64,000 bases of DNA from IMGVR_UViG_3300022839_000006:1-64000, one strand, 5' to 3'. Positions 6,571 to 43,105 are shown, counted from the first letter of the stretch. Translations and numbers: made by a program. Notes: a model not told the origin generated them from the letters alone.

Positions 6571-7956
6571 ATGATAGAGCAAACTATTCTTGCTAATCTA
6601 CTTTACAATGGGGAGTTTTGTCGCAAAGTCATCCCATACATCAAAGAAGAGTATTTTGATGATGTTGCTACCAAAAAGATATTTGCATCTTTCTCTGAAT
6701 ATGTCAGTACATACAAAGAACCACCTTCAATTGAGGCTCTCAAGATTACGCTGGAGGCGCGTAAAGATCTCAACGAGGATTTGTTTAAAGCTGTTAATAC
6801 AGCCGTCGACGAGTTGAAGATTGATGCAGCAACTAATCAAGATTGGCTTTTAGGCGAGACAGAGAAGTTCTGCCAAGACAAGGATCTGTTCAATTCAATT
6901 AGAAAAGCAATTTTGATTCTTGATGGGCAAGACAAAGAGTTTGACAAGGGTGCTATTCCTAAGCTGTTGTCTGATTCGCTTGGAATCAACTTTGATAGTC
7001 ACATTGGGCATGATTATATTGAAGATGCAGACAGTCGTTATGATTTCTATCATCGCACAGAAGAGCGAATTCCTTTTGACATTGATCTGTTGAACCAAAT
7101 CACTAAGGGTGGACTGCCCCGCAAATCCTTGACGTTGATTTTAGCGACCACAGGTGGTGGCAAAAGTTTGATGAAATGTCACATGGCTGCAGCTTCTCTT
7201 ATGCATGCCAAGAACGTCCTCTACATAACAGCTGAGATGGCTGAGGAGAGAATTGCAGAACGCATTGATGCTAATCTATTAGACGTCACAATTGATCAGC
7301 TACGAGAAATGCCCAGAGAAATGTTCAATACAAGAATTGCCAAGGTTAAAAGCAGAACGCCCGGAAAACTTGTAGTCAAAGAATACCCTACAGGGTCTGC
7401 TCACGCAGGACACTTTAGACATCTTCTCAATGAGCTGAAACTAAAGAAGGGGTTTGTTCCTGATATTATCTTCATTGATTATCTCAACATCTGTGCATCT
7501 TCTCGTGTGAAGGGTGCAGCAGCCGCAAACTCATACACACTGGTCAAGTCAATCGCTGAGGAAATACGTGGTTTAGCAATGGAGTTTGATTGTCCTATTG
7601 TATCGTCAAGTCAGTACAACCGCGGAGCATACGATTCGAGCGACGTTGACCTCACAAACACGTCTGAATGTATCTACGTTAAAGAAACAGTTACCATGAG
7701 TGACGGAACGTCGAGATGCATATCTGACCTGAAACCAGGCGACAAAATTAAAAGCGAAGACAGTACAAAGCTAGTCACGATGGTCCACCATCCTAAGATG
7801 AAGGATTGTGTCAAGATTAAAATGAACAGCGGCAAGTCAATCACTGTCAGTAAGGATCACGTATTTCCATCTATGTCAAACGACGGTGTTGTGTCGCGAC
7901 TATCTGTCAGTCAGGGACTAAATGTAGGTTACAGTCTTAATGTGGTAGAGGATTAA
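6571..7956 (+). CDS. 41: Replicative helicase gp41 N-extein fused to split-intein N-half (7669-7953, 95 aa)
   Basis: Walker A ATTGGGKS, AEMAEERIAERIDAN, IFIDYLN, SIAEEIRGLA; switches at NTSE|C to Hint (block B ITVSKDHVF). Confidence 0.95.
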   Translation: MIEQTILANLLYNGEFCRKVIPYIKEEYFDDVATKKIFASFSEYVSTYKEPPSIEALKITLEARKDLNEDLFKAVNTAVDELKIDAATNQDWLLGETEKFCQDKDLFNSIRKAILILDGQDKEFDKGAIPKLLSDSLGINFDSHIGHDYIEDADSRYDFYHRTEERIPFDIDLLNQITKGGLPRKSLTLILATTGGGKSLMKCHMAAASLMHAKNVLYITAEMAEERIAERIDANLLDVTIDQLREMPREMFNTRIAKVKSRTPGKLVVKEYPTGSAHAGHFRHLLNELKLKKGFVPDIIFIDYLNICASSRVKGAAAANSYTLVKSIAEEIRGLAMEFDCPIVSSSQYNRGAYDSSDVDLTNTSECIYVKETVTMSDGTSRCISDLKPGDKIKSEDSTKLVTMVHHPKMKDCVKIKMNSGKSITVSKDHVFPSMSNDGVVSRLSVSQGLNVGYSLNVVED

Positions 7957-7959
7957 CAT

Positions 7960-8574
7960 ATGAATGACAGCCAAATGGAAAAGATGCAGAACGATTGTTT
8001 TGTTAAAGCTCATCATATGATCGCCAATAACATGACCAAAGAGATGGACTTGTTTGACCTGACAGATCTGCTGATAAGCATGGAGATGGAGAAGGAGGAG
8101 AAGCAACAGGTTGAAGACAGTAAAATTGATTATAATGATACCATTGTAGAAATTGAGAATGTCGGCATGGTGGAAACGGTAGATATATCTGTAACAGGTA
8201 GTCAATTGTTCTACTGCAACAACATCTTGACAAAAAACAGCATGGGGATTGCTCACACTGCAGATTGTATCCTCGGCTTGATCTCTTCAGAAGAATTGGA
8301 GGCGATGGGCCAAATCATGATCAAGCAGTTAAAAAACAGATGGGGCGATCTTGGATTCTATAGACGGTTTGTTGTTGGAATAGACAGATCAAAAATGAAG
8401 CTGTATGACTTGGAAGAAGGTGCGCAGAGCGATGTTCAAAACGAGACAAGGAAAAAACAACAACCACGAGAGGATGAGGATAAGCCTACGTTCGATACCT
8501 CTAACTTCGGACAAGAGGAATCATTTAGAATGAAACCTTCTTGGAAGAAAACTAAGGCAGACGGATTCATATGA
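7960..8574 (+). CDS. 41: Split-intein C-half (7960-8238) fused to gp41 C-extein
   Basis: RBS GAGGA at 7948-7952; block F TVDISV; block G ILTKN|S; then SMGIAHTAD...KQLKNRWGD..RFVVGIDRSKMKLYD. Confidence 0.93.
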   Translation: MNDSQMEKMQNDCFVKAHHMIANNMTKEMDLFDLTDLLISMEMEKEEKQQVEDSKIDYNDTIVEIENVGMVETVDISVTGSQLFYCNNILTKNSMGIAHTADCILGLISSEELEAMGQIMIKQLKNRWGDLGFYRRFVVGIDRSKMKLYDLEEGAQSDVQNETRKKQQPREDEDKPTFDTSNFGQEESFRMKPSWKKTKADGFI

Positions 8575-9197: not shown

Positions 9198-10765
9198 TGG
9201 ATACAGATGAGAACCTTGTTGGGTTATATTTGAAAATTGTTGAGACAAAGAAAGATCTCCCTGTCTACAACGATTTTCTTGCACTTGATGTTTCGAGAAG
9301 TACTATCAGACACCACTTTGGTGGCATCGAAAATCTACACGCACAGATGAGAGAAACACACGAAGAGGAGCTCAAGGTGCACTTCTCTACAGTGGAAAGC
9401 ATTTTTGATCCTAATCGATCAATTGACGTATCAACCACCAAGTTTGTGATTACGACAGCAGTTGCTGACTCACCTGCCGATAAAAATTTCCTTGCTGCTT
9501 TAAAGCTATATTGCGATACGAACAGTGCACAGCTCGTAATCATGCCTTGCGAAAGTGTTACCAACAGTTTCGAGAAAAAGACTGCAACATTTGATCCAAT
9601 CTTCAACGAAGCACACTTTAGAGTTGTCAATAGCGATGTTCAGCTCAACAGCAATTTTTCTTTGTGTAGCATTCAGGTATCTGCAAAACAGATCAAATCA
9701 ATCACAGGCCTTTCACGTCTTGGAAATCGTGAAGGTTCGTATGTGTTCGCAAGCCCAAAACAGTTCCTTGAGTATGTTCCATCAGGTAACAACCGTGGTA
9801 AGAACTATGCTATCATGACGCCCGGTGCGTGTACAAAATCATCATACTATACAGACACGTTTGTATCAAAGCGTCTTTCATATATTGCAGAATCAGACCA
9901 CACAATCGGTGCAATCATTGTTGATATTGAAAACGAAACCAAGTTTGATTTTAGACAGATTCAAGCTGCATCAGACGGATCCTTTATTGATGTGGGGACA
10001 CAATACAACTCTGATGGTACTATGTTGCAAGTTCCTGTCAACGTCATTCTTGGCGATCTACACTCGACGTTTATTGATAAGGAGGCTCTTGATTATTTCA
10101 TAGAAAAATTCAAGAGCCTGAAGGTTGATTGCATTTTTCTCCATGATGTCTTTGACGCATATTCAATAAATCATCACGTTAAAGACATTGCCGAGAAGGC
10201 TGCTAGATCAAATAAAGGGGCAGATTCACTAGAAGAAGAGGTGCTTTTGACATTTGACACAGTCAAGTACGTTGCGGACAAATTAAATCCAACGACCGTG
10301 AACATCGTCAAATCAAACCACGATGAGTTTCTCGATCGTTATCTTGCAGCAGGCACGTATGTTGAGGATCCTAAGAACCATCTATTCAGCTTGAGAATAG
10401 CACCGACGCTTTTTGACGAGGGTGAAGATGTGCTAAAGGCTGCTATGAATCTCGTTGAGACTGTTCCTAACAACTGGAGATTTCTTTCACGTGAAGATTC
10501 TCTGAGGATTGGCGGTGTCGAATGCGCCGCGCACGGTGATCTTGGCATGAACGGAGCCAAGTGTTCTCTGAACTCGTTGGAGAAGATTTACGGTGATAGT
10601 GTCACGGGACATACACACTCTGCAGCAATACAAAGATCAATCTTTAGAGTCGGAACCCTTTCTGATCTTAACATGAGATACAACAGAGGTCCGTCTTCAT
10701 GGACCCAGACTTGTTGTTTACTATACAACAACGGTCAGAAACAACTGATCAATTTCATACGCTAA
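9197..10765 (+). CDS. Large calcineurin-like metallophosphoesterase-domain protein
   Basis: GDLHS, LHDVFD, SNHDE, HGD, GHTHS motifs in the expected order. Confidence 0.75.
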   Translation: MDTDENLVGLYLKIVETKKDLPVYNDFLALDVSRSTIRHHFGGIENLHAQMRETHEEELKVHFSTVESIFDPNRSIDVSTTKFVITTAVADSPADKNFLAALKLYCDTNSAQLVIMPCESVTNSFEKKTATFDPIFNEAHFRVVNSDVQLNSNFSLCSIQVSAKQIKSITGLSRLGNREGSYVFASPKQFLEYVPSGNNRGKNYAIMTPGACTKSSYYTDTFVSKRLSYIAESDHTIGAIIVDIENETKFDFRQIQAASDGSFIDVGTQYNSDGTMLQVPVNVILGDLHSTFIDKEALDYFIEKFKSLKVDCIFLHDVFDAYSINHHVKDIAEKAARSNKGADSLEEEVLLTFDTVKYVADKLNPTTVNIVKSNHDEFLDRYLAAGTYVEDPKNHLFSLRIAPTLFDEGEDVLKAAMNLVETVPNNWRFLSREDSLRIGGVECAAHGDLGMNGAKCSLNSLEKIYGDSVTGHTHSAAIQRSIFRVGTLSDLNMRYNRGPSSWTQTCCLLYNNGQKQLINFIR

Positions 10766-10816
10766 AAACAAGGGAGCTGTAATGGCTCCTTCACATGCAA
10801 AAGTGGGTGAAGTATC

Positions 10817-11026
10817 ATGTTCAACAAAACGATCAGAAAAATCCATCTGATCTTAAACCGACTCCAGCTTATTATTATTATACATCTGATGGAGAGATAC
10901 GACACCTCGAGCAGGGCATTAGACAGCGACACAAATCCTGACTCTGTTTGGCAAGGTGTGCAGAGTTCAGAAGACGTTTCTATTAAACAAGCACACAGAA
11001 TATTTAAAAGACGCTTAGGCAAATAG
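10817..11026 (+). CDS. Hypothetical protein
   Basis: Short ORF only; no recognised motif. Confidence 0.3.
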   Translation: MFNKTIRKIHLILNRLQLIIIIHLMERYDTSSRALDSDTNPDSVWQGVQSSEDVSIKQAHRIFKRRLGK

Positions 11027-11459
11027 GAAAGAGTCACCCCTGTAGGGTATGGCTGATGTTCCTATAAAGCCTAGGCTTTTTCCGTTTCTCTGGAATAAAT
11101 ATCGCCATACACGTGCAAAAGGGAAACGACGATGTTCAAAACGATACGCGATTACTTTACATACTTACGAGTGGTTCAAGATCTGTCACAAATGACAGAC
11201 AACCAGTTGAAGGACATAGGAATCACACGAGGCGATATAAGAAATGTAGCAATGTCGTGTCCGCCTTTATCTGGTCAAGAATCGCGATGAAGTACATAAA
11301 AAACTTCTTTGTATCATACGTTAAAGCAAGAGAACGGAGTGTTGCGCGTCAGCTGTTAACACATTATAACCACCTTCTGGATGATGAAGTCAGAAGAAAC
11401 ATTCAAGAACAGCTTAGGGATAAATAGTCGCGTCCGAATGGCCACTGTATTCTTGGAGA

Positions 11460-12677
11460 GTGAACATGAACTACGAATCGGGACTTGATGTTGCCTTGAA
11501 CCTTCTACGTTCAGAGGGACGTTACAGGACGTTTGTTGATATTGAGCGCAAAAGGGGTGCATATCCTACCGCTACGTGGTACGATATAGATGGAGAACGT
11601 CGAGACATTGTTGTGTGGTGTGGCAACGATTATCTCGGCATGGGTCAACATCCTGTAGTTTTAGAGGCAATGGCTGTTGCACTTGAGGCAACAGGAGCGG
11701 GTTCAGGCGGCACGAGAAACATATCAGGAACCACAGTATACCACGGCAGACTTGAAGCGGAACTGTCTGATTTGCATCAGACAGAGGCTGCTCTTGTATT
11801 CACCTCAGCATACAATGCCAACGATGCTACATTGTCAACGTTGCCCAAGCTCTTTCCAGGCCTCATCATATATTCCGATGCGCTGAATCACGCTTCGATG
11901 ATTGAGGGCATGAGACGTAATGGTGGCGCAAAGCGTATCTTTAGGCACAACGATGTTGACCATCTACGTGATCTACTTGCTGCTGACGATCCATCTGCTC
12001 CAAAGTTAATTGCATTCGAATCTATATACTCGATGGATGGTGATTTTGCACCGATAGAAAGAATATGTGATCTTGCGGATGAATTTAACGCTCTTACGTA
12101 CATTGACGAGGTACATGCTGTCGGCATGTACGGGCCACGTGGAGCAGGCGTATGTGAGCGTGACGGTCTGATGGGTAGAATTGATATTATCAACGGTACA
12201 TTGGCCAAAGCCTACGGCGTGGCAGGTGGCTACATCGCTGGATCAGCCAAGATGTGCGACGCAATACGATCTTATGCGCCAGGATTTATATTTACGTCCT
12301 CTATGCCTCCTGCCGTTGCTGCTGGGGCAGCAGCATCAGTACGTTATTTGAAAACCGCGCAACATATGCGCGACACGCACCTACTTCGTGTCAACATGTT
12401 GAAAGGACACTTTAAAAGGATTGGACTACCTTTGATTGATAACGGCAGTCACATTGTTCCTGTACATGTAGGCAACCCCATCCACTGTAAGGCATTGTCT
12501 GACATGTTACTAGAACAACATGGAATTTATGTGCAGCCTATCAACTTTCCTACGGTCCCACGTGGAACTGAGAGACTTCGGTTCACGCCTTCTCCTGTTC
12601 ACAGCATTGGCCAAATAGACCATTTGGTTCAGGCGATGGACGAACTTTGGCATAGGTGCACACTCGGCCGCTCTTAG
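11460..12677 (+). CDS. hemA: 5-aminolevulinate synthase (PLP-dependent, Shemin pathway)
   Basis: [60 protein letters not shown] (PLP lysine), [18 protein letters not shown]. Confidence 0.96.
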
Positions 12678-13009
12678 AAGCTATCGTTGTTATTGGAGCC
12701 TTTTCGTATGCTCATATATGCTTCTTTGCCATAGAACGCAGCCACAATACCTGCCACAGATATAAAATACAAGTCGGCCATCGATGCTAAAATAGAAGCG
12801 TCGAAACTCGTCACAGTCAAACCTATCACAAGCAGCGGATAGGTAACCATCCCGCCAATAGCAACCCACGCCATCTTCCGCTGAGCATCCTCCTTTTTGT
12901 CTGCATTTTCGATTGATGTGAGCTTTTCCATGTTTTTTATTTCTTCGCTATCAATGTTTCCATCACCGTTTGCATCGTGTTCAGAGTTTGTACCTGTGCG
13001 CTTCGACAT
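12674..13009 (-). CDS. Two-TM membrane protein with an EF-hand-like loop
   Basis: [12 protein letters not shown] then AQRKMAW and two hydrophobic helices ending [14 protein letters not shown]; start placed at ATG 13009. Confidence 0.65.
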
Positions 13010-13097
13010 GTTAATACTTCCTATTAAAATTGCCATAACAAAAGATCATCCATAACTTATTTATACTAACAATCTATTACACACGAGTCTAATTTTA

Positions 13098-13105
13098 TAT
13101 AAATA
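13098..13105 (+). promoter_or_regulatory. T4-type late promoter
   Basis: TATAAATA about 35 nt upstream of ORF 13140. Confidence 0.65.
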
Positions 13106-13139
13106 CCTTCAGAACCCATTATTTACTCGAGGATTTGCT

Positions 13140-14696
13140 GTGACAAAAGAACCTGTCGATGTTATTAACAAGGCTGTAGAGAAGATCGACGACGTCGACA
13201 AGGCCGTAAAGAAGAGAAAAACAGACAATTCAAAATTTGTAGAATTGGACCCAACCACAGCTGATGGCGGCGATCCTATTACAGAAGTGTCAATTCTTGA
13301 CGAGAGAGCCCCACTGTCTATCCAACAGCGACGTGCACGTGGAAGGACGATGAGACGGTATAAAGGGCGCATTGCAATGGCACGTAAACGCGCTGCAAAG
13401 CGTAAGGCTTCACCTGAAAAGTTAAAGACACGTGCACGTAAAAAAGCAAGAGAGATTATTAAGAATAGACTTGCAGCGGGAAAGAAATACTCAGAGATGT
13501 CCTCGTCCGAAAAAATACAACTCGATAAGAGACTTCTTAGAATATCACCCACAGCAATTAATCGGATTGCCACAAGGCAGTTGCCAACCGTTCGAAAAGC
13601 GGAAATGGAGAGACTGGCAAGGGTCCGCAGTACCGACGCATCGCCAACCACAAAAGAGAGCATTGATACGCAGTTTGACAATTTCATAAACGAAATGCGT
13701 GAGTGTCCCCCAAAGGTACATCACCGTGCATTCACTAAAGAGGGTCGGGTCAAATTTGACAGAAGATTTAAAATGTACCGTAGCAAAGAAGATAAATTGG
13801 ACGAACTGTTTGCTCAAAATTTTATTGAAGATGCTGCAGATCTGATGAACATCACAGAGAGCAAGTTGCAAAAAGACAAAGACGATCCTTGCTGGGATGG
13901 CCATGTTCAGCTTGGCACTAAAATGAAAAACGGCAAGGAGGTCCCCAACTGCGTCCCGACCGAATCTACTGATCCATATGACCGCGAACAAGGAACTGAT
14001 AGCCTTGTCAGAATATATAAGGGCGATACACCAGGTCAAAACGAAAACTATTACCAAACAGATCTCGGCTCAGATTTCACAAACCTTACAAGAGGCGATC
14101 GTGTAAGGTTTACACAACATACAATGGACGTAGTGACAGATGGTGAAAAACAGGGAACAGTTGTTGGAAGTACTGTAGAACACCTACGCGTACGCGATTC
14201 GGAAGGATTTCTATACCTTGTGCGTCACCGCGACGCACAATTAATTGAGGATTTGAATTCCATTTTTGAATCGCGTTTTAATGAGAATGTGGTAGAATAC
14301 ACCCTAATGGAAGACGATGAAGTATGTGGTGTATTTACTCAGAGCCAGATGGCCTCTTTCGAAAAGGTTGTCGACAAACTTTTTGCAAAATTTGGGATAA
14401 ACTTTGACTTTACACGACACTTCCGCGACCGGATGTCTGATATAAGAAACAACCCCTGTATCAACGTCAAAGAGCTCGCACTGATGATTAACAAAATTTA
14501 CAAAAAGAAGGTTGCAGGGGTTGACCTGTTGTCTAAACATGTGAATACTGAAGTGGTAATTAAAGACATGCAGACGGATCTTAATATGCCAATAGCAATT
14601 GAATATGATAGGTCGAGAGATGAATTGCGTGTAGTTTCAAAAACAATCATGCGCAAAAAGAACTTCCGTACACCAAATCCTGAGGTCAAAGTGTGA
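13140..14696 (+). CDS. Modular probable virion/head-associated protein
   Basis: Late promoter; very basic segment RRARGRTMRRYKG...; CWDGHVQLGTKMKNGKEVPNCVP motif typical of cyanophage-like head proteins; distinct C-terminal domain. Confidence 0.6.
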   Translation: MTKEPVDVINKAVEKIDDVDKAVKKRKTDNSKFVELDPTTADGGDPITEVSILDERAPLSIQQRRARGRTMRRYKGRIAMARKRAAKRKASPEKLKTRARKKAREIIKNRLAAGKKYSEMSSSEKIQLDKRLLRISPTAINRIATRQLPTVRKAEMERLARVRSTDASPTTKESIDTQFDNFINEMRECPPKVHHRAFTKEGRVKFDRRFKMYRSKEDKLDELFAQNFIEDAADLMNITESKLQKDKDDPCWDGHVQLGTKMKNGKEVPNCVPTESTDPYDREQGTDSLVRIYKGDTPGQNENYYQTDLGSDFTNLTRGDRVRFTQHTMDVVTDGEKQGTVVGSTVEHLRVRDSEGFLYLVRHRDAQLIEDLNSIFESRFNENVVEYTLMEDDEVCGVFTQSQMASFEKVVDKLFAKFGINFDFTRHFRDRMSDIRNNPCINVKELALMINKIYKKKVAGVDLLSKHVNTEVVIKDMQTDLNMPIAIEYDRSRDELRVVSKTIMRKKNFRTPNPEVKV

Positions 14697-15748
14697 TACG
14701 TTTCAAACAATATCTTTCTGAGAGCGCTCAAGCAGCTTCTACATTTAAAGATGCGCGAAGTATTGTATCTTATATCAAGAGCGAAAGGACCAAACAAAAT
14801 TATATTGACGCTCTGGCAGCTCTTGAAATGGCAGCAGAGCAAAAAGAGATATACAACGCAAGGTTCTCTGATCACAAATCGGCCATAACACGTGGAATAG
14901 AATATGCGTACAGGACGTTGTTCGACGAAATAAAGGCTGATGTAATCAGATCAGGCCAAGAAACACATGACCTTTGGAGCATGACATCTGCAGGCGACAT
15001 CAAGAGAATAACGAAGATATTTAATAGCATGTCCCCAAAGATTTCTACAGCAGTTGCGTTCACAGATGCTGTTTCAGGAATACACGATGGTTTCAAGATC
15101 TTAAAGGGCTACGTCAAATCGGGGAAGCCACCTGCTCAGCCGAAACCAGGACAGTTCTACAAGCCTATAGCTTCTGTAGACGCAACAAAATTAGCGTTGA
15201 AGTTTATGAGAGAAGCCTCAGGCTCGTTTTCAAAAGAGTTGAAAGTAAGTGTCACTAATCAAATGATGGGCGCGTATGAAAAAATTCTTACCATTACCGA
15301 TCCAAAAAACTTGCCAAAAGATCCTAACACTCAACAAGTTGCTAATACAATCTTTATTGTAAGAGGTACTCGTAGAGATGCTACACTAGAGCTAATAGAC
15401 GGGCACAAGGCAAGAGTAACAAAATTAATTGATGATAGTGTTGCAATGGTCGTTGATAGATTCGTTGCTAAAAACTCTTCGAAGCTTGCGCTCATACTTC
15501 AGAAAAAAGACACGCCAAAGACACACAAAATTATAAAGACAAATATAAACAACGGCATGGTAGAAAATACTATGGTGTTTGAATTTAATGACGGCAGCAG
15601 TTTTGTCATTACGAGCAGTGTGTTGTTCAAGCGGAGTACAAACGGAAAGCTCTTTTTTCAATATCCAACACGTTTCCGAGACGTGAAGATGGCTGATGGA
15701 TCAGCAATGAAAGGCCCATCTGAAGAAAAAATGATTAAAGAATTTTAG
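14693..15748 (+). CDS. Putative internal head protein
   Basis: N-terminus MIRFKQYLSE resembles the T4 capsid-targeting sequence. Confidence 0.55.
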   Translation: MIRFKQYLSESAQAASTFKDARSIVSYIKSERTKQNYIDALAALEMAAEQKEIYNARFSDHKSAITRGIEYAYRTLFDEIKADVIRSGQETHDLWSMTSAGDIKRITKIFNSMSPKISTAVAFTDAVSGIHDGFKILKGYVKSGKPPAQPKPGQFYKPIASVDATKLALKFMREASGSFSKELKVSVTNQMMGAYEKILTITDPKNLPKDPNTQQVANTIFIVRGTRRDATLELIDGHKARVTKLIDDSVAMVVDRFVAKNSSKLALILQKKDTPKTHKIIKTNINNGMVENTMVFEFNDGSSFVITSSVLFKRSTNGKLFFQYPTRFRDVKMADGSAMKGPSEEKMIKEF

Positions 15749-15772: not shown

Positions 15773-16306
15773 ATGATTAGATATAAGGCATACACACAAA
15801 GAACAGTTACAGATCCAACGTCCCAGTGGAAAAATACAGCTCCTGTGAAATATGCCAGACATCTCAGTATGTTTTTTGGACAACCTGAAGAATTGACCGA
15901 AAAAAGAGCTGTGTGGTACAACAAAGACGGTTTCATAAGAATAGAAGTGTTGGACGAGTTTGTTCTACACGCCTCACCAACCCCACACCACGATTATGTG
16001 TATTGCTATGTCAATTTAAAAATTCCACACGAAATGGCTGATGACCTAGCAATGAGCAGTGAAAGCATTCTTATCGACAATCTCAAGAGTGAGCTTGGTG
16101 CACGGTGTTCAAGTCTGAGCGCAAATGCAACAACAATACAATACGTAATGGATGTCGTCGAAAAAAGAGTCGTTCCATCCAAAGCAGAGTATGAAAAAAG
16201 AATTAAGTCTATGAGTAAAATGTTCGTGGATGGTGTAAAGTTCGAACTTGATTGGTGGCCCGATAAATCAGGCGACACTGATCCTGATAACCCATATTAT
16301 AAATAA
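15773..16306 (+). CDS. Hypothetical protein, possible internal protein
   Basis: N-terminus MIRYKAY; PTPHHDYVY and ELGARC motifs resemble a bacterial family of unknown function. Confidence 0.55.
   Translation: MIRYKAYTQRTVTDPTSQWKNTAPVKYARHLSMFFGQPEELTEKRAVWYNKDGFIRIEVLDEFVLHASPTPHHDYVYCYVNLKIPHEMADDLAMSSESILIDNLKSELGARCSSLSANATTIQYVMDVVEKRVVPSKAEYEKRIKSMSKMFVDGVKFELDWWPDKSGDTDPDNPYYK
16298..16305 (+). promoter_or_regulatory. T4-type late promoter
   Basis: TATAAATA about 30 nt upstream of ORF 16337 and its RBS aagagga. Confidence 0.7.
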
Positions 16307-27627: not shown

Positions 27628-29724
27628 ATGGATAGACGAGAACCATTTTATTGGCTAAACGAAGACTCGCGCAAATTCTTGTCACGAGGATATTTGAGCG
27701 AATCGGAAACACCTGAAAGTCGCATTCGCGACATTGCAAACACTGCAGAAAAATACCTTAACGAACCAGGATTTGCAGATAAATTCTACGAATATATGAG
27801 TCGTGGATATTATTCATTGGCTTCGCCTGTGTGGGCTAACTACGGCAAAGCGCGTGGTTTACCTGTTTCGTGCTTTGGATCATACATTGACGATCACATG
27901 GAATCGATTATGTACGGTGTTGCTGAAAACGGCATGCTAATGAAAAACGGTGGCGGGTGCTCTGGTTACTTCGGTGCAGTACGTCCACGTGGTTCCCATA
28001 TTAAGGATTCAGGCGAGTCCTCAGGATCTGTTCACTTTATGCAGCTATATGATACACTGTCGTCTGTAATATCGCAAGGGTCTGTTCGCAGAGGGTTCTT
28101 CACAGCATATCAAGACATCGATCACAAAGATGCGGACGAGTTCCTTGATATCGGTTCAGAAGGCAATCCGATTCAAGGTCTGACAACAGGAATTGTTGTA
28201 TCGGACGATTTTATTCGTCAGGTCAAGGCAGGTGATGCAGAGAAGCGTCGTCTTTGGGCTAAGGTTCTTCAACGTAGATCAGAGATGGGATATCCATACA
28301 TCCTATTTGGCGATAATGTAAACAATAACAAGCCACAGGTTTATAAAGACAAGGATATGCGTGTTCATGCTAGTAACATGTGCCTTCGTGGGGACAGTGT
28401 TATTACAATACAACTTCCTTCCAACACGCTTCCTGAAGTCGTTGAAATTGAAACATTCTGTAAGTTGTGGGCTATTGGCGGTATCCCATCTGATACAAAG
28501 GTTAAAACAGAACATGGTTTTCAAGTGGTGACTGCTGCTGCTCAAACAGGGTCCACTAAAGATATGATTCGAATCACAGACGATGTTACAGGAAAAGTTG
28601 TTGAGTGTACGCCCAACCACAAGCTATTCACTCAAAATAGAGGTTGGGTCGAGGCTCAAGATCTTACAGAAGAAGATCAATTGCTGATTGATGGTTCGTC
28701 GAGCAAAACAATCAAAACAGAAAGAATTACGTACGAAGAAGAAATCCCTGTGTACGACATCACAGTGCCAGAAACGCAATCATTTTTTGCTAATGATGTA
28801 TTAGTACACAACTGTGCAGAAATTTCCCTACCATCTTCTGTCGATGAGACGTTTACGTGTGTGCTTTCCTCAATTAACGTACTCTTTTGGGACGAACTCG
28901 CTCAAACAGATGCAATTGAAGTGATGACTAAATTTCTTGATACGGTATGCGAAGAATTTATCATCAAGACAGAGGGCCAAGAGTATCTCAAACGTGCACG
29001 AAACTTTGCAATTAATCACCGTGCATTGGGCGTAGGCATTCTTGGTTGGCACTCGTATCTTCAATCAAACATGATTCCTTTTGAATCGAAGGCAGCCTCC
29101 AAAAAGAATCTTGAGATTGCTAAGACGCTTCAGGAAAGATCGCATGCAGCCTCACGCGAGCTCGCTGTGTCGCTGGGCGAGCCTCCACTGCTTGAAGGCT
29201 ATGGAATGCGTAACGCAACTACCATGGCAATTGCGCCGACGCGGTCTAGTTCGTTTATTTTAGGACAAGTCAGCCAGTCCATTGAACCTGAATTCTCCAA
29301 CTGTTACGTCAAAGATCTTGCTAAGATTAAAGTAACAATCAAAAACCCCTACCTTGACAAACTACTTAGTGAAAAAGACAAAAATACGTATGATGTGTGG
29401 GAGTCGATTAAGACAAACGACGGATCAGTACAACACCTTACGTTTTTGACTGATGAAGAGAAGGAAGTGTTCAAGACGTTCTCGGAGATAAATGCATATG
29501 CAGTAATTGATCACGCTGCAATCAGACAACAATACATCGACCAAGGACAGAGCTTGAATCTTATGCTAGATCCTGACATGTCTGTAAAGGAAATCAACGC
29601 ACTGTATCTGTATGCACACGAGATGGGTGTAAAGAGTCTGTATTACAGCTTCTCAATGTCTGCTGCACAAGCGTTGACACGTAAGCGTGTACAATCGATG
29701 GACTGTGCTGCTTGCGAAGCCTAA
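27628..29724 (+). CDS. nrdA: Ribonucleotide reductase alpha subunit lacking an ATP-cone, with a cis mini-intein
   Basis: SPVWANYG..RGLPVSCF, GGGCSG, VRRG, SNM|C..HN|CAEI, RALGVGILG, AIAPT, QGQSLN, KSLYY, C-terminal CAAC. Confidence 0.95.
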   Translation: MDRREPFYWLNEDSRKFLSRGYLSESETPESRIRDIANTAEKYLNEPGFADKFYEYMSRGYYSLASPVWANYGKARGLPVSCFGSYIDDHMESIMYGVAENGMLMKNGGGCSGYFGAVRPRGSHIKDSGESSGSVHFMQLYDTLSSVISQGSVRRGFFTAYQDIDHKDADEFLDIGSEGNPIQGLTTGIVVSDDFIRQVKAGDAEKRRLWAKVLQRRSEMGYPYILFGDNVNNNKPQVYKDKDMRVHASNMCLRGDSVITIQLPSNTLPEVVEIETFCKLWAIGGIPSDTKVKTEHGFQVVTAAAQTGSTKDMIRITDDVTGKVVECTPNHKLFTQNRGWVEAQDLTEEDQLLIDGSSSKTIKTERITYEEEIPVYDITVPETQSFFANDVLVHNCAEISLPSSVDETFTCVLSSINVLFWDELAQTDAIEVMTKFLDTVCEEFIIKTEGQEYLKRARNFAINHRALGVGILGWHSYLQSNMIPFESKAASKKNLEIAKTLQERSHAASRELAVSLGEPPLLEGYGMRNATTMAIAPTRSSSFILGQVSQSIEPEFSNCYVKDLAKIKVTIKNPYLDKLLSEKDKNTYDVWESIKTNDGSVQHLTFLTDEEKEVFKTFSEINAYAVIDHAAIRQQYIDQGQSLNLMLDPDMSVKEINALYLYAHEMGVKSLYYSFSMSAAQALTRKRVQSMDCAACEA
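28381..28812 (+). mobile_element. 144-aa mini-intein without endonuclease at the catalytic cysteine of NrdA
   Basis: C1-LRGDSVI; block B ECTPNHKLF; block F VYDITV; block G VLVHN|C; excision restores SNMCAEI. Confidence 0.95.
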
Positions 29725-29830: not shown

Positions 29831-30352
29831 ATGCTTATTGGACTTGTTACAACTGCCGCCAAGATTGTCAATGTGCTTGTTGTTGCAAGCATGGTTGGGA
29901 TCGGTGTTCACTCTTACAACGACGTCAAAATCTCCAATTTACTGAGACAAATATCTGATGAACAAGCATTGTGTCTTCAACAGAATGTGTATTTTGAAGC
30001 GCGCAACCAGAGTAGTCTCGGGCAACGTGCTGTTGCATGGGTTACTCTGAACCGTGTCAAACACACAAGATATCCTGATACCATTTGTGATGTTGTGTGG
30101 CAAACAAAACAGTTCAGCTGGACACATGACGGCAAACCAGATCGGCCATCAACGGGTGTAGTTGAACAGCGCGCATGGGAAAAGGCAAAAACAGTTGCCA
30201 ACAAGGCACTGATTCGTTGGCTCCAAGACGAAGAGGGTCCTGTCGAAAGTGCAACAATGTTCCACGCTGACTACGTGACGCCCTTTTGGACAAGCAGCTA
30301 CGATCGTGTAGCCCAGATCGACGCACACATTTTTTATAGTTCCGACCGTTGA
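29831..30352 (+). CDS. SleB/Hydrolase_2 cell wall hydrolase
   Basis: CLQQNVYFEARNQ...AVAWVTLNRV...YPDTICDVV.Q..QFSW; FHADYV.P.W; IDAHIFY. Confidence 0.9.
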   Translation: MLIGLVTTAAKIVNVLVVASMVGIGVHSYNDVKISNLLRQISDEQALCLQQNVYFEARNQSSLGQRAVAWVTLNRVKHTRYPDTICDVVWQTKQFSWTHDGKPDRPSTGVVEQRAWEKAKTVANKALIRWLQDEEGPVESATMFHADYVTPFWTSSYDRVAQIDAHIFYSSDR

Positions 30353-32888: not shown

Positions 32889-33305
32889 ATGGAAATGGTT
32901 AAAGTGATTTGGTTTGTGTTGGGGATTCTGCTTCTCGGTGTTGCATATCTTGGCGTAGTCCTACCAGGAATCCCATGGAGCACACCTGCTGTGGGTGCTG
33001 CTTATTGTTTTGCAAAATCCAGCACAAGGATGCACAAATGGATATACAGTCACAAATTGTTTGGTCCTTTCTTGGTTGGTTGGCAAGAAAAAAGAATATT
33101 TCCACTAAGATTCAAGTTTTTTATGGTAGCAACAATGTCAACTTCACTAATATCTCTGTGGTTCACTACAGGTAACATACTTGCAGTGATGTGGTCTGGT
33201 GGGTTTATGTTGTTGGTTGGGATTTGGGGTTGGAGATACCCAAGTTCGGACGACGAACACCAAAAAAGAGTAAAAAATCAAAAACGTATAGGGTGGTTAA
33301 AATAG
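32889..33305 (+). CDS. YbaN / DUF454 membrane protein
   Basis: LGVVLPGIPWSTP.V.AAYCFAKSS.R.HKW...H.LFGP. Confidence 0.8.
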   Translation: MEMVKVIWFVLGILLLGVAYLGVVLPGIPWSTPAVGAAYCFAKSSTRMHKWIYSHKLFGPFLVGWQEKRIFPLRFKFFMVATMSTSLISLWFTTGNILAVMWSGGFMLLVGIWGWRYPSSDDEHQKRVKNQKRIGWLK

Positions 33306-33429
33306 ATGGAAATGGTGCGCTAAATATGTTATATACTGCATCGAACCACCTTCAATTTCGATGCAGTATATAACGTTGGCTATTAATAATCAGTGGACTG
33401 TGTGTCCGCGTACAATTGAAGGAAAAACA

Positions 33430-34038
33430 ATGAGTAAAAAAGCATCAAATTTCGACTTGGCTGATATTTTTGGCAAGCAGACAAAACAAGACGACAAAAG
33501 TTTCTGTAAGCCTATTGTGCACATACACGAATTTTATCTGAGCGGTGTGATAGAATCCGCTGATGCTTATATCCAGTGGTTTGACACAATTCGCCATGCT
33601 GGGTCCAACGACGCAATAAAAATATACATAAATTCGTATGGTGGAGATATAAATACTGCAATTCAAATGTTGAGAATTCTTAACGATACAGAAGCGACCG
33701 TAATTGTATCTATCGAAGGTGCGTGTATGTCGGCAGCTACTATGGTGTTGATGGTAGCGGACAGTGTTGAAGTTTCACCACATTCGCAAATTATGTTCCA
33801 CAACTATTCAGGTGGTACTATCGGAAAGGGCAGTGATATGCATTCGCAGATAGAATTCGAAAGAATGTGGTCTATCAAACTGATGAACGGTGTGTATGAA
33901 GACTTTCTGTCGAAAGAAGAAATCCAAAAACTTTTAGATGGTAGTGATTTGTGGATGGATGGCGACGAAGTTGTTAAGCGATTGGAAGCAAAAAACAAGA
34001 AAGATAAACCTAAGTCCAAGTCCAAGAAAAAATCATAA
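33430..34038 (+). CDS. clpP: ClpP-like serine protease
   Basis: IYINSYGG, EGACMSAAT (catalytic Ser), IMFHNYS (His), DLWMD. Confidence 0.85.
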   Translation: MSKKASNFDLADIFGKQTKQDDKSFCKPIVHIHEFYLSGVIESADAYIQWFDTIRHAGSNDAIKIYINSYGGDINTAIQMLRILNDTEATVIVSIEGACMSAATMVLMVADSVEVSPHSQIMFHNYSGGTIGKGSDMHSQIEFERMWSIKLMNGVYEDFLSKEEIQKLLDGSDLWMDGDEVVKRLEAKNKKDKPKSKSKKKS

Positions 34039-41121: not shown

Positions 41122-41690
41122 AAGTTTACATTTACTTAAATAACTGGCACATTGATTAGGAGACGTTTGGGACTGATATCGTCTGGGTGTCAGATCAACT
41201 ACATCCACCATATTCCAGATCTGAAATTAATGCATGACCAAGTGGAGTTTTGGGAAGATGGGACCAAACAATGGTCCAAGGAACATGACGGAAAAATGTC
41301 ACTAAATTGGATCTGATAAATAGAAGACAACCCAATGTCTAAACTTGCATTCATGGATGCAGAAACAAAAGAATACTTTGTCAACGAGAAATTTGACAAG
41401 TTTAATTTCTCGTTGGACATCAACAGGGCAAAACTTTACTTTAGAACTCCTGGGGTTTTGAGTGGGTCAAACTCAAAACAAAAAGACAGTTGACATTGGT
41501 TGAAGTTAAAATTGATAATAGAGGCACATCACTATTTCTCGATGAATTACATGATGGTCGACTCAAAGAGTTCCAGCGTCTAGATCTATTGGCAACAAAG
41601 AACTTGGAAGAAATGGAGACATCGTCATATTATCGGTGGCGAACACCAAGGAAAGAACTTACAACTTAATTAACCAAAGGAGTTTTGGTA

Positions 41691-42704
41691 ATGACTAAAG
41701 AATTTGATACACTTGTAACGGTAATGAGGATGCAACCATTCCACCTTGGTCACCAAGCAGTGATCGGCGCCGCATTGAAAAATGCACACGAAGTAATAGT
41801 GGTAATTGGATCTAGCTTCCAACCACGAACCACAAAAAACCCATTTACATTTGAAGAACGCAAAGCCATGGTGCTTGCATGTTATCCTGATCTACCAGTC
41901 CGAGTGGTTGGGGTTCGGGACTATCCTTATGACGACAATGCTTGGGTGTCTGCTGTTCAACATGTAGTGGATTCGGTTAAGACTGGTACTCGAACAGGGT
42001 TGATTGGGCACTCCAAAGATTCAAGTTCATACTACTTGAAAATCTTTCCGAATTGGCGGAAACATGTGGAAGTTGAGAATTATCAGGGCATTAACGCAAC
42101 TGATATCCGATCGGATTTATTCTCCAATGGAGTATATTTTACGAGTGGTGTTTTGATGCCGCGATCGGCGCTGGCCTCCATGTCGATGGCATTGTTGGAA
42201 GGAACGTGGTGGCCTGATCTCAAAGAAGAACATACGCAGATTAAAGCATACCACGAGAAATGGGAATCAGCACCATATGCACCAACCTTTGTGACAACGG
42301 ATGCAGTGATTGTGCAATCTGCTCATGTGTTGCTAATCAAACGTGGCAACTTCCCGTTCAAAGATTGTTGGGCATTGCCAGGTGGGTACCTCGAAAAAGA
42401 CAAGACAATTGAGGAAAACGTGATCAAAGAGCTCAGAGAAGAAACGTGCATCAAACTTCCTGCTAAGGTTCTTAAAGGTTCCATCAAGTCAACTCAAGTG
42501 TTTGATCACCCTGACCGTGATCCCAGAGGTCGTACCGTTACACACGCCTTTTATATTGATCTTGGATTTCCAGATGAGAAACTGCCCCGAGTAAAAGGTG
42601 CGGATGATGCAGTCCACGCAGAATGGGTTCCTCTCAGTCAAGTGTCAAGTGACATCATGGCGTTTGACCACTACTCTGTTATTTCACACTTTGTAAAAAT
42701 TTAA
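41691..42704 (+). CDS. nadM: Bifunctional NMN adenylyltransferase / ADP-ribose pyrophosphatase (NadM-Nudix, NatV-like)
   Basis: RMQPFHLGH, IGSS, KNPFTFEERKAM, NATDIR; Nudix box LPGGYLE..KTIEENVIKELREET; DPRGRTVTHA, GADDA. Confidence 0.95.
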   Translation: MTKEFDTLVTVMRMQPFHLGHQAVIGAALKNAHEVIVVIGSSFQPRTTKNPFTFEERKAMVLACYPDLPVRVVGVRDYPYDDNAWVSAVQHVVDSVKTGTRTGLIGHSKDSSSYYLKIFPNWRKHVEVENYQGINATDIRSDLFSNGVYFTSGVLMPRSALASMSMALLEGTWWPDLKEEHTQIKAYHEKWESAPYAPTFVTTDAVIVQSAHVLLIKRGNFPFKDCWALPGGYLEKDKTIEENVIKELREETCIKLPAKVLKGSIKSTQVFDHPDRDPRGRTVTHAFYIDLGFPDEKLPRVKGADDAVHAEWVPLSQVSSDIMAFDHYSVISHFVKI

Positions 42705-43068
42705 ACAAGTCACACAACGGAGAAAAATTATGGAAAATCTGATCGAGGCATATTGAGCGAGAAAACAAAAGGAAACAATAAATGACAGCTCAGCAGAAAT
42801 GAAATCAATTGACGACAATCTTTATTCTGGCCATGGAAGATACCGTGGTGTGTATATTGAATTATATGAGGGATAAAATGAAACGAACAGTTAGAATTGC
42901 ATTGAGAATTATTGGTTAACTATTACATGGAATGGGCATGTGACGCGGGACTGGCCGGTGGGGAACAATATACTCGATATTGCCAAGACATTACTGTTCT
43001 ATATTTCCAGAAGATGTACTTTATGAAGATGTAACAAAAGAATACAGTTGACAACCAACACACTATAA

Positions 43069-43076
43069 TATAAATA
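43069..43076 (+). promoter_or_regulatory. T4-type late promoter upstream of nadV
   Basis: TATAAATA about 30 nt before the start; a TTGACA hexamer lies upstream at non-canonical spacing. Confidence 0.5.
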
Positions 43077-43105
43077 ACAATATCATTAACTAGAGGAGTT
43101 CTATA

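What the first reader, a model, noticed from the sequence alone, without database searches (positions are those of the whole stretch)
11460..12677. Phage-encoded 5-aminolevulinate synthase (hemA)
Seen: a full-length ALAS with all PLP and catalytic motifs and its own RBS, set among phage genes. Known: the Shemin route (glycine plus succinyl-CoA) is restricted to Alphaproteobacteria and non-plant eukaryotes, and it is the committed, regulated step for heme, B12 and bacteriochlorophyll. Inference: this auxiliary metabolic gene may bypass host control of tetrapyrrole flux to sustain respiration or anoxygenic photosynthesis during infection, and it points to a Rhodobacterales-like host. It is rarely discussed as a phage gene.
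Basis: partly seen in the sequence, partly recalled or inferred. Interest (0 to 1): 0.65.

Follow-up and report, generated by a model that had tools for sequence, protein, structure and literature searches.

The report
Phage 5-aminolevulinate synthase, host-derived copy
A large T4-like phage from a salt lake carries an intact gene for the first enzyme of heme synthesis; such phage genes were described in 2024, but this copy was captured separately from a Rhodobacter-family bacterium and still has the residues that let heme switch the enzyme off.

Summary
Window 11466-12677(+) encodes a 403-aa 5-aminolevulinate synthase (ALAS). It scores 643.7 bits on TIGR01821 (cut-off 338.6) and 677 bits against the R. 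capsulatus structure 2BWN. All PLP and substrate residues are intact.

It sits in a real T4-like myovirus of 208 kb. The gene is not contamination:
- its GC3 (0.42) matches the phage (0.40), not Rhodobacterales hemA (0.75);
- a contig from a second study spans both junctions;
- a 93%-identical relative is collinear, with dN/dS 0.12.

Phage ALAS is already published (valaS; Wegner et al. 2024, Nat Commun 15:8783), including complementation of E. coli. So "rarely discussed" is outdated.

Three points are new here:
- This copy, with three relatives, nests inside Pseudorhodobacter-type ALAS (83-84% identity). It lies apart from the published viral clade; one viral clade is rejected (p-AU 2e-11).
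- Of 26 viral copies, only this one and its closest relative keep both heme-ligand residues.
- The phage also carries heme oxygenase and a bilin reductase elsewhere.

In passing: the classic viral ALAS is tightly linked to a DUF454 membrane-protein gene (61 of 80 loci). This was not found in that paper's main text.

Verdict: a new member of a known kind, of moderate interest.

The parts
11466..12677 (+). 5-aminolevulinate synthase CDS (403 aa plus stop). The ORF also opens at GTG 11460, but ATG 11466 is the likely start.
   Evidence: TIGR01821 643.7 bits vs cut-off 338.55. 2BWN 677 bits with all active-site residues. Gene callers give 403 aa. Only one ALAS in the genome.
11454..11459 (+). Shine-Dalgarno-like GGAGAG ending 6 nt before ATG 11466 (GGAG core 11454-11457, 8 nt upstream)
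   Evidence: Read directly from the sequence. Conserved in relative L001.
11132..11290 (+). 52-aa DUF1127 small protein gene just upstream of ALAS
   Evidence: Pfam PF06568, 37 bits vs cut-off 23.3. The ORF is conserved in L001.
11287..11427 (+). 46-aa ORF of unknown function. Its ATG overlaps the DUF1127 stop (ATGA) and it ends 38 nt before the ALAS ATG.
   Evidence: ORF conserved in L001. No Pfam or PHROG match.
10817..11026 (+). 69-aa ORF of unknown function, followed by stem-loops at 11023-11095
   Evidence: ORF conserved in L001. No family match. The fold is weakly better than shuffles, z = -1.65.
11095..11101 (+). ATAAATA motif resembling the T4-type late promoter core, 31 nt upstream of the DUF1127 ORF (inferred, untested)
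   Evidence: 17 copies in the window vs 9.8 expected; 1 of 100 shuffles reached 17. Most copies lie just upstream of genes. Conserved in L001.
11420..11426 (+). Second ATAAATA motif, 40 nt upstream of the ALAS ATG (inferred, untested)
12674..13036 (-). Convergent 120-aa ORF whose stop overlaps the ALAS stop by 4 nt. It has an EF-hand-like loop ([12 protein letters not shown]) and hydrophobic helices.
   Evidence: Weak PHROG 27150 match. Conserved in L001 and in two other assemblies.
32889..33305 (+). DUF454 (YbaN-like) membrane protein gene. In other phages it is the usual direct neighbour of viral ALAS; here it lies 20 kb away.
   Evidence: PF04304, 84.7 bits. Adjacent to ALAS in 10 of the 25 ALAS loci. 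ALAS lies within 6 kb in 61 of 80 viral DUF454 loci.

Best explanation
Window 11466-12677 is a functional auxiliary metabolic gene of a T4-like myovirus (208-kb record from a salt-lake metagenome). It encodes a PLP-dependent 5-aminolevulinate synthase, which condenses glycine and succinyl-CoA to 5-aminolevulinate. The phage has no ALA dehydratase or ferrochelatase, so the product must feed the host's own tetrapyrrole pathway. Expression from the phage genome keeps or raises ALA supply independently of host hemA transcription.

The gene was captured from a Pseudorhodobacter-like member of the Paracoccaceae/Rhodobacteraceae, separately from the previously described viral alaS clade. It has been resident long enough for its synonymous sites to take on phage composition, and it is under purifying selection. 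It keeps both heme-ligand residues, so it is probably still heme-inhibitable. The phage's own heme oxygenase and bilin reductase would consume heme. Together the three genes could drive flux from glycine and succinyl-CoA through heme to a bilin.

Shown: identity, integrity, phage residence, origin and selection. Inferred: activity, timing of expression, heme sensitivity and physiological role.
For: Identity: TIGR01821 643.7 bits vs cut-off 338.55, with paralog families all below their cut-offs. 2BWN gives 677 bits over the full length, and 14 of 14 known PLP or substrate residues are conserved.

Phage residence: gp23 capsid, gp20 portal, gp5/6/7-like baseplate, gp43, gp46 and topoisomerase II on the same contig, with CheckV completeness 100%.

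Not contamination: ALAS GC3 is 0.423, against 0.397 +/- 0.062 for the phage's ORFs and 0.752 (minimum 0.536) for 61 Rhodobacterales ALAS genes. A 13.5-kb contig from a different study spans 9500-14500 with 28 substitutions and no gaps. A 263.8-kb JGI contig has the same gene order. L001 is collinear at 87-94% nt identity over about 21 kb, including the gene.

Selection: dN/dS is 0.12 against L001.

Origin: 83-84% identity to Pseudorhodobacter and Cypionkella ALAS. The copy sits in a starred clade of 4 viral and 9 Pseudorhodobacter-type sequences, separate from a 19-member viral clade. The AU test rejects one viral clade, p = 2.4e-11. The nearest bacterial relatives lie in ordinary chromosomal context.

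Pathway: heme oxygenase at G000 203322-203894 and a bilin reductase at 189480-190166. No ALAD or ferrochelatase.

Precedent: a viral AlaS complements an E. coli ALA auxotroph (PMC11480375).
Against: No enzyme assay and no RNA data exist for this gene; no listed run is RNA. The sigma-70-type promoter scan is not above chance, and the late-promoter-like motifs are only a consensus match. Phage GC (42%) is far below that of known Pseudorhodobacter-type genomes, so the present host may not be the donor lineage. That H340 and C398 confer heme inhibition rests on work in other ALAS enzymes, as cited in PMC11480375, not on this protein. The AU-tested group was named after the tree had been seen.
Confidence: 0.82

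Rival explanations
1. Physiological role differs. The ALAS mainly supplies precursor for phage-directed bilin synthesis (ALAS, then host heme pathway, then phage heme oxygenase, then phage bilin reductase), rather than sustaining respiration or photosynthesis.
For: The same genome encodes a heme oxygenase (76 bits) and a ferredoxin-dependent bilin reductase (58 bits). These three genes form cassettes in related viral contigs (L006 and L010; PMC11480375). Retained heme ligands would make ALAS activity respond to heme removal by the oxygenase.
Against: In this genome the three genes are dispersed, at 11.5, 189.5 and 203.3 kb. No bilin-binding protein was identified. The purpose of viral hemO and pcyX in non-cyanobacterial hosts is still called enigmatic in the literature.
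Confidence: 0.3
2. Assembly chimera or host contamination: a bacterial hemA was joined to phage DNA by the assembler.
For: The protein is unusually close (83-84%) to bacterial ALAS. High-GC ALAS fragments from bacteria are present in the same lake runs (loose ends).
Against: GC3 is 0.423, which is phage-like and lower than all 61 bacterial homologs. Three independent assemblies show identical junctions. A collinear relative carries the gene at 92% nt identity, within the range of its flanks (87-94%). No bacterial flanking genes are present.
Confidence: 0.02
3. It is an alpha-oxoamine synthase of another specificity (Kbl, BioF or serine palmitoyltransferase-like), not an ALAS.
For: These families are homologous and all match at E < 1e-50.
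Against: Only TIGR01821 exceeds its curated cut-off. The nearest solved structures are ALAS, at 677 bits against at most 228 bits for Kbl/BioF. Succinyl-CoA and glycine contact residues are conserved.
Confidence: 0.02
4. It is a neutral passenger or decaying gene with no role in infection.
For: No expression data. Some related DUF454-bearing phages carry no ALAS at all.
Against: dN/dS is 0.12. The frame is intact in four lineages (window, L001, L002, L003), whose synonymous sites are saturated between them. All catalytic residues are kept in 26 of 26 viral copies. Acquisition is repeated and independent.
Confidence: 0.05

Closest known systems
Viral AlaS (valaS) of aquatic phages, Wegner et al. 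2024, Nat Commun 15:8783 (PMC11480375)
   Same: It is an ALAS gene carried as an auxiliary metabolic gene by T4-like myoviruses of aquatic habitats. All catalytic residues are intact. The genome also holds hemO and an FDBR. This falls in their category of an individual valaS with hemO and pcyA/X elsewhere.
   Different: It is not in the monophyletic viral clade, which is about 50-55% identical to it. Instead it nests within Pseudorhodobacter-type bacterial ALAS at 83-84%. It keeps both heme-site residues, whereas all 19 classic-clade copies lack the His. It is not next to DUF454. The metagenome ids of this lineage were not found in the paper's supplementary files held as text.
Rhodobacter capsulatus HemA/ALAS (PDB 2BWN) and Pseudorhodobacter/Cypionkella ALAS
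   Same: 403-407 aa with the same domain. The window protein scores 677 bits against 2BWN and is 83% identical to P. antarcticus ALAS. The active site is identical and the heme-ligand His and Cys are retained.
   Different: It is encoded in a 42%-GC phage with GC3 of 0.42 instead of about 0.75. It is flanked by small phage ORFs rather than the M20 peptidase, DUF4189 and RodZ chromosomal context. It lacks 2 residues in the loop after the position equivalent to residue 298 of the R. capsulatus enzyme.
Cyanophage and pelagiphage tetrapyrrole AMGs (ho1, pebS, pcyA, pcyX)
   Same: These are phage genes acting on the heme/bilin branch. Homologs of ho1 and pcyX-type FDBR are present in this genome.
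   Different: Those enzymes act downstream of heme, whereas ALAS is the entry step. tblastn found no ALAS in the 50,697 GenBank phage records; every match was a Kbl/BioF-type paralog of at most about 35% identity, and the window's own record may be left out of that collection.

Membership tests
5-aminolevulinate synthase (EC 2.3.1.37; NCBIfam TIGR01821) | Whole-protein score above the curated equivalog cut-off, with paralog models below theirs | tested here: met
   643.7 bits vs 338.55. BioF 318.5 vs 426.45, Kbl 303.3 vs 460, and the SPT models all below cut-off.
5-aminolevulinate synthase (EC 2.3.1.37; NCBIfam TIGR01821) | Schiff-base lysine (K248) and PLP-binding residues H142, D214, H217, T245 | tested here: met
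   All are present at identical positions in the alignment with 2BWN. They are invariant across 26 viral and 92 bacterial sequences.
5-aminolevulinate synthase (EC 2.3.1.37; NCBIfam TIGR01821) | Glycine and succinyl-CoA contact residues (R21, N54, T83, N85, S137, K156, R374 in R. capsulatus numbering) | tested here: met
   All conserved; R374 corresponds to R372 here. Residue roles are taken from established knowledge of the 2BWN/2BWO/2BWP structures.
5-aminolevulinate synthase (EC 2.3.1.37; NCBIfam TIGR01821) | Catalyses glycine + succinyl-CoA -> 5-ALA + CoA + CO2 | not testable with these tools
   Needs complementation or an enzyme assay. A viral homolog from another clade was shown to be active (PMC11480375).
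Published viral AlaS clade (Wegner et al. 2024) | Encoded on a bona fide phage genome | tested here: met
   T4-like structural and replication genes on the same 208-kb record. Independent assemblies agree.
Published viral AlaS clade (Wegner et al. 2024) | Clusters with the other viral sequences, apart from bacterial ALAS | tested here: not met
   It nests in Pseudorhodobacter-type ALAS (98% SH-aLRT for the 13-row set), while the classic viral clade of 19 is separate at 100%. The AU test rejects joint monophyly, p = 2.4e-11. The classic clade is equated with the paper's clade through its contig from metagenome 3300012953, the metagenome of L011.
Published viral AlaS clade (Wegner et al. 2024) | Loss of one or both heme feedback residues (His342, Cys400) | tested here: not met
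   H340 and C398 are both present in the window and L001. They are lost in L002 and L003 (N, Y). The His is absent in all 19 classic-clade copies.
Published viral AlaS clade (Wegner et al. 2024) | Co-occurrence with viral hemO and pcyA/X | tested here: met
   Heme oxygenase at G000 203322-203894 and FDBR at 189480-190166. They are dispersed, not a cassette.
Auxiliary metabolic gene (host-derived metabolic gene maintained by a phage) | Host homologs exist, the gene is flanked by phage genes, and it is maintained by selection | tested here: met
   Bacterial homologs at 83-84%, phage flanks, dN/dS of 0.12 and phage-like codon composition.

The most novel reading that the evidence does not exclude
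ALAS was lost and then regained in this phage lineage. The ancestral arrangement in these T4-like phages is a classic, heme-insensitive viral ALAS directly beside a DUF454 membrane-protein gene. The window's sub-lineage kept DUF454 but lost that ALAS, and later captured a fresh copy from a Pseudorhodobacter-like host.

The window and L001 copies still have both heme ligands. The sister branch (L002, L003) has already lost both, converging on the classic viral state. If so, these four sequences are a natural time series of how a captured host enzyme is stripped of feedback control. The phage-specific ALAS-DUF454 pairing would then mark an uncharacterised membrane partner of ALA or tetrapyrrole metabolism.
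Probability: 0.4. Interest if true: 0.55.

Novelty: new member of a known kind. Interest (0 to 1): 0.35.

Why it matters
Phage-encoded ALAS is an established but recently described auxiliary metabolic gene, so the bare finding adds little. This locus adds three things.

First, it shows that the function was acquired by phages at least twice, from different alphaproteobacterial sources. That argues for strong, recurrent selection for control of the committed step of tetrapyrrole synthesis during infection.

Second, it offers host-like and de-regulated versions of one acquisition side by side: the window and L001 against L002 and L003. This makes the published idea that viral ALAS escapes heme feedback directly testable with natural variants.

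Third, the close match to Pseudorhodobacter-type ALAS gives a concrete host hypothesis for an uncultured 208-kb salt-lake phage.

The ALAS-DUF454 linkage seen in passing may point to a function for a widespread protein family of unknown role.

Tried and rejected
- GenBank phage records (INPHARED): tblastn with the ALAS found only Kbl/BioF-type paralogs of at most about 35% identity (about 31% over full length), mostly in contaminated or transducing records. No ALAS appeared in any of the 50,697 records, though the window's own record may be left out. Megablast of 20 kb of the window found nothing.
- Sigma-70 promoter and intrinsic terminator scan of 10600-13300: counts were not above shuffles, and no convincing promoter lies directly upstream of ALAS.
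- RNA evidence: no RNA run holds the locus, so expression could not be addressed.
- Other heme-pathway genes in the phage: ALA dehydratase (PF00490) and ferrochelatase (PF00762) are absent.
- DUF454 beside bacterial hemA: none within 3 kb in 80 bacterial loci, by tblastn or by a profile built from the viral proteins. The linkage is therefore not inherited from bacteria.
- DUF454 in cultured phages: one weak hit in a 3.3-kb unannotated record only. Literature on DUF454/YbaN gave no function.
- ALAS elsewhere on five DUF454-bearing viral contigs that lack an adjacent ALAS: none found, including a 330-kb contig that is 93% complete.
- A 104/123-aa ORF (11113-11427) called upstream of ALAS by one pipeline was rejected. 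The region is better read as two small conserved ORFs, DUF1127 and a 46-aa ORF.
- One search was aimed at a slightly wrong stretch, the region just downstream of the capsid gene (scaffold-protein region). It only re-confirmed T4-like kinship.
- No structure prediction or complex prediction was run. Sequence identity to a solved ALAS made the first unnecessary, and no binding claim is made.

Full report
**Observation.** The ORF reported at 11460-12677(+) exists. ATG 11466 is preceded by GGAGAG at 11454-11459. It gives a 403-aa product, the same length called by two independent pipelines on near-identical contigs. NCBIfam TIGR01821 (5-aminolevulinate synthase) scores 643.7 bits against a cut-off of 338.55, while BioF, Kbl, serine palmitoyltransferase and CqsA models all stay under their cut-offs. 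Pfam sees one Aminotran_1_2 domain. The best solved structure is R. capsulatus ALAS 2BWN, at 677 bits over residues 1-398. The Schiff-base lysine K248, the PLP residues H142, D214, H217 and T245, and the substrate residues R21, N54, T83, N85, S137, K156, E185, S189 and R372 are all conserved. Residue roles come from established knowledge of the 2BWN/2BWO/2BWP structures.

**Is it really a phage gene?** The window carries the following:
- a DnaB-like helicase
- a T5 A1-like protein
- primase
- thymidylate synthase
- class I ribonucleotide reductase
- NadV/NatV
- a Dda-like helicase
- DNA ligase

The window is the first 64 kb of a 208,230-bp IMG/VR virus record, rated 100% complete by CheckV. 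That record also encodes a T4 gp23 capsid protein (488.7 bits), a gp20 portal (531.2 bits), gp5/gp6/gp7-like baseplate proteins, a split gp43 polymerase, gp46 and topoisomerase II. It has 12 tRNA genes. It is a T4-like myovirus.

Four lines of evidence exclude host contamination or a chimeric join:
1. ALAS GC3 is 0.423. The phage's own ORFs average 0.397 +/- 0.062. Sixty-one Rhodobacterales ALAS genes average 0.752, with a minimum of 0.536.
2. A single 13.5-kb contig from a different study of a salt-lake metagenome covers 9500-14500 with 28 substitutions and no gap.
3. A 263.8-kb JGI contig has the same gene order around a 99%-identical ALAS.
4. Viral contig L001 is collinear over about 21 kb at 87-94% nucleotide identity. 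Its ALAS is 92% identical at nucleotide level and 93% at protein level, with dN/dS of 0.12.

**What is already known.** Viral alaS was published by Wegner et al. 2024 (PMC11480375). They found it in marine, salt-pond, peat-bog and freshwater viral contigs, alone or with hemO and pcyA/X. It was about 55% identical to Pelagibacteraceae AlaS and clustered apart from bacterial sequences. Many copies lacked His342 and/or Cys400. One copy rescued an E. coli ALA auxotroph. ALAS was also listed in large freshwater phages in 2020. The experiments it proposed have been done for another member of the kind.

**What differs here.** The best database relatives, after the near-identical phage copy, are Pseudorhodobacter and Cypionkella ALAS at 80-84% identity. 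The two closest lie in ordinary bacterial chromosomal context: M20 peptidase, DUF4189, RodZ and IspG.

In a 118-sequence tree, the window, L001 and the pair L002/L003 form a group nested in a starred clade of Pseudorhodobacter-type sequences. Nineteen other IMG/VR copies form a separate viral clade with 100% support. That clade is the published one: its members come from, among others, metagenome 3300012953, the source of one of the paper's contigs. With a 45-sequence set, forcing all viral sequences together costs 89 log-likelihood units (p-AU 2.4e-11). The caveat is that the group was defined after seeing the tree, and this was a quick search. L004, L005 and L007 fall elsewhere. L004 and L007 have 65% GC and may be bacterial or prophage DNA.

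Phages have therefore acquired ALAS at least twice. L003 shares downstream neighbours with the window (homologs of 14693-15748 and 15773-16306), which fits one capture in their common ancestor. The metagenome ids of this lineage were not found in the paper's supplementary files held as text.

**Regulatory residues.** Of 26 viral copies, only the window and L001 keep both H340 and C398 (His342 and Cys400 of R. capsulatus). L002 and L003 have Asn and Tyr. All 19 classic-clade copies lack the His. Bacteria keep the His in 76 of 92 sequences and the Cys in 86 of 92. So the "bypass of host control" is plausible for transcription but cannot be assumed for heme feedback in this copy. The contrast with its sister branch fits the published idea that phage copies tend to shed feedback control.

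**Pathway context.** The genome has exactly one ALAS. It has no ALA dehydratase and no ferrochelatase. It does have a heme oxygenase (G000 203322-203894) and a ferredoxin-dependent bilin reductase (189480-190166).

The most likely mechanism is that phage ALAS raises ALA input into the host pathway. The phage oxygenase and reductase can then draw heme on to a bilin. If the enzyme is still heme-sensitive, heme removal by the oxygenase would keep it active (inference). Nothing ties it to bacteriochlorophyll.

**Local anatomy.** Three small ORFs lie between the A1-like gene and ALAS, and all are conserved in L001: 69 aa, a 52-aa DUF1127 protein and 46 aa. ATAAATA motifs resembling the T4 late-promoter core sit at 11095 and 11420. 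They are enriched in the window (17 against 9.8 expected), mostly just upstream of genes. This suggests, but does not show, late transcription. A convergent 120-aa membrane-type ORF overlaps the ALAS stop.

**Host.** The donor was a Pseudorhodobacter-like Paracoccaceae bacterium. DUF1127 proteins are, to my knowledge, typical of Alphaproteobacteria. The closest cultured-phage homologs of two neighbouring proteins come from Ochrobactrum and Ruegeria (DSS3) phages. High-GC ALAS fragments occur in the same lake runs. The present host is inferred, not shown, and the 42% GC of the phage is a caution.

**Seen in passing: the ALAS-DUF454 pairing.**
- In 10 of the 25 ALAS loci the gene directly downstream is a DUF454 (YbaN-like) membrane protein.
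- Searching IMG/VR with the DUF454 alignment gave at least 407 loci. Of the best 80, 61 have ALAS within 6 kb, mostly abutting.
- None of 80 bacterial hemA loci has DUF454 within 3 kb.
- GenBank phage records gave only one weak DUF454 hit, in a short unannotated record.
- The main text of the 2024 paper does not contain the terms DUF454 or YbaN.
- The window's DUF454 (32889-33305) is 20 kb from ALAS. It groups with that of L003's contig, in a weakly supported set of mostly ALAS-less DUF454 genes. Five such contigs have no ALAS at all.

This supports, without proving, loss of the classic ALAS followed by re-acquisition from a host.

**Verdict.** This is a real, intact and very probably active phage ALAS. 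It is a new member of a known kind, with an independent host-derived origin and retained heme-site residues. Interest is moderate (0.35).

Noticed in passing
window 32889-33305; loci L006, L008, L016, L017, L020-L025 and L121-L197: A DUF454 (YbaN-like) membrane-protein gene is the direct neighbour of classic viral ALAS. ALAS lies within 6 kb in 61 of 80 viral DUF454 loci. None of 80 bacterial hemA loci has DUF454 within 3 kb, and GenBank phage records gave only one weak hit. The terms DUF454 and YbaN were not found in the main text of the 2024 valaS paper. In this phage the two genes are 20 kb apart.
   Followed up: partly
window 6571-7956 and 7960-8574: The DnaB-like (gp41-type) helicase is in two same-frame ORFs separated by a TAA (7954-7956) and one codon. 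A Hint-module match lies at the end of the first ORF, and helicase homology resumes about 90 residues into the second. This looks like an intein interrupted by a stop, or a split intein. The arrangement is conserved in L001.
   Followed up: partly
window 28381-28812, inside NrdA 27628-29724: The ribonucleotide reductase large subunit carries a mini-intein of about 144 aa, running from CLRGDS to VHN followed by C (Pfam Intein_splicing, 44 bits).
   Followed up: partly
G000 203322-203894 and 189480-190166 (outside the window): Heme oxygenase and ferredoxin-dependent bilin reductase genes lie in the same phage genome, dispersed from ALAS. In L006 and L010 the two are adjacent and close to ALAS.
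   Followed up: yes
window 11132-11290: A 52-aa DUF1127 protein gene lies directly upstream of ALAS. To my knowledge this family of small proteins is typical of Alphaproteobacteria. No PHROG family matches it.
   Followed up: partly
window 41685-44605: An NAD salvage pair is present: a NadR/NatV-like cytidylyltransferase-Nudix protein and a NadV nicotinamide phosphoribosyltransferase. It is shared at 61-66% identity with L002/L003, where it lies a few kb upstream of ALAS.
   Followed up: no
window 12674-13036 (-): A convergent 120-aa ORF overlaps the ALAS stop codon. It has an EF-hand-like calcium-binding loop ([12 protein letters not shown]) followed by hydrophobic helices. Function unknown.
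   Followed up: no
runs X1, X3, X4 laid on window 11838-12572: The same salt-lake samples hold other ALAS contigs: an AT-rich (phage-like) one at higher depth, and GC-rich (Rhodobacteraceae-like) ones. Several ALAS-bearing phages and candidate hosts therefore co-occur.
   Followed up: no
JGI contig of 263,791 bp (L117) versus G000 of 208,230 bp: A contig with a 99%-identical ALAS and the same local gene order is 55 kb longer than the record rated 100% complete. The true genome size, or the relation between the two, is unresolved.
   Followed up: no
G000 157264-160117 and 151768-153480 (outside the window): The T4-type DNA polymerase (gp43) is encoded as two ORFs. A 570-aa homing or HNH endonuclease-like gene lies nearby.
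   Followed up: no
window 33361-34038: A ClpP-like serine protease gene follows DUF454 directly. A SleB-type cell-wall hydrolase (29831-30352) lies 2.5 kb upstream of DUF454. Homologs of the hydrolase sit near ALAS-DUF454 in L020 and L022-L024.
   Followed up: no
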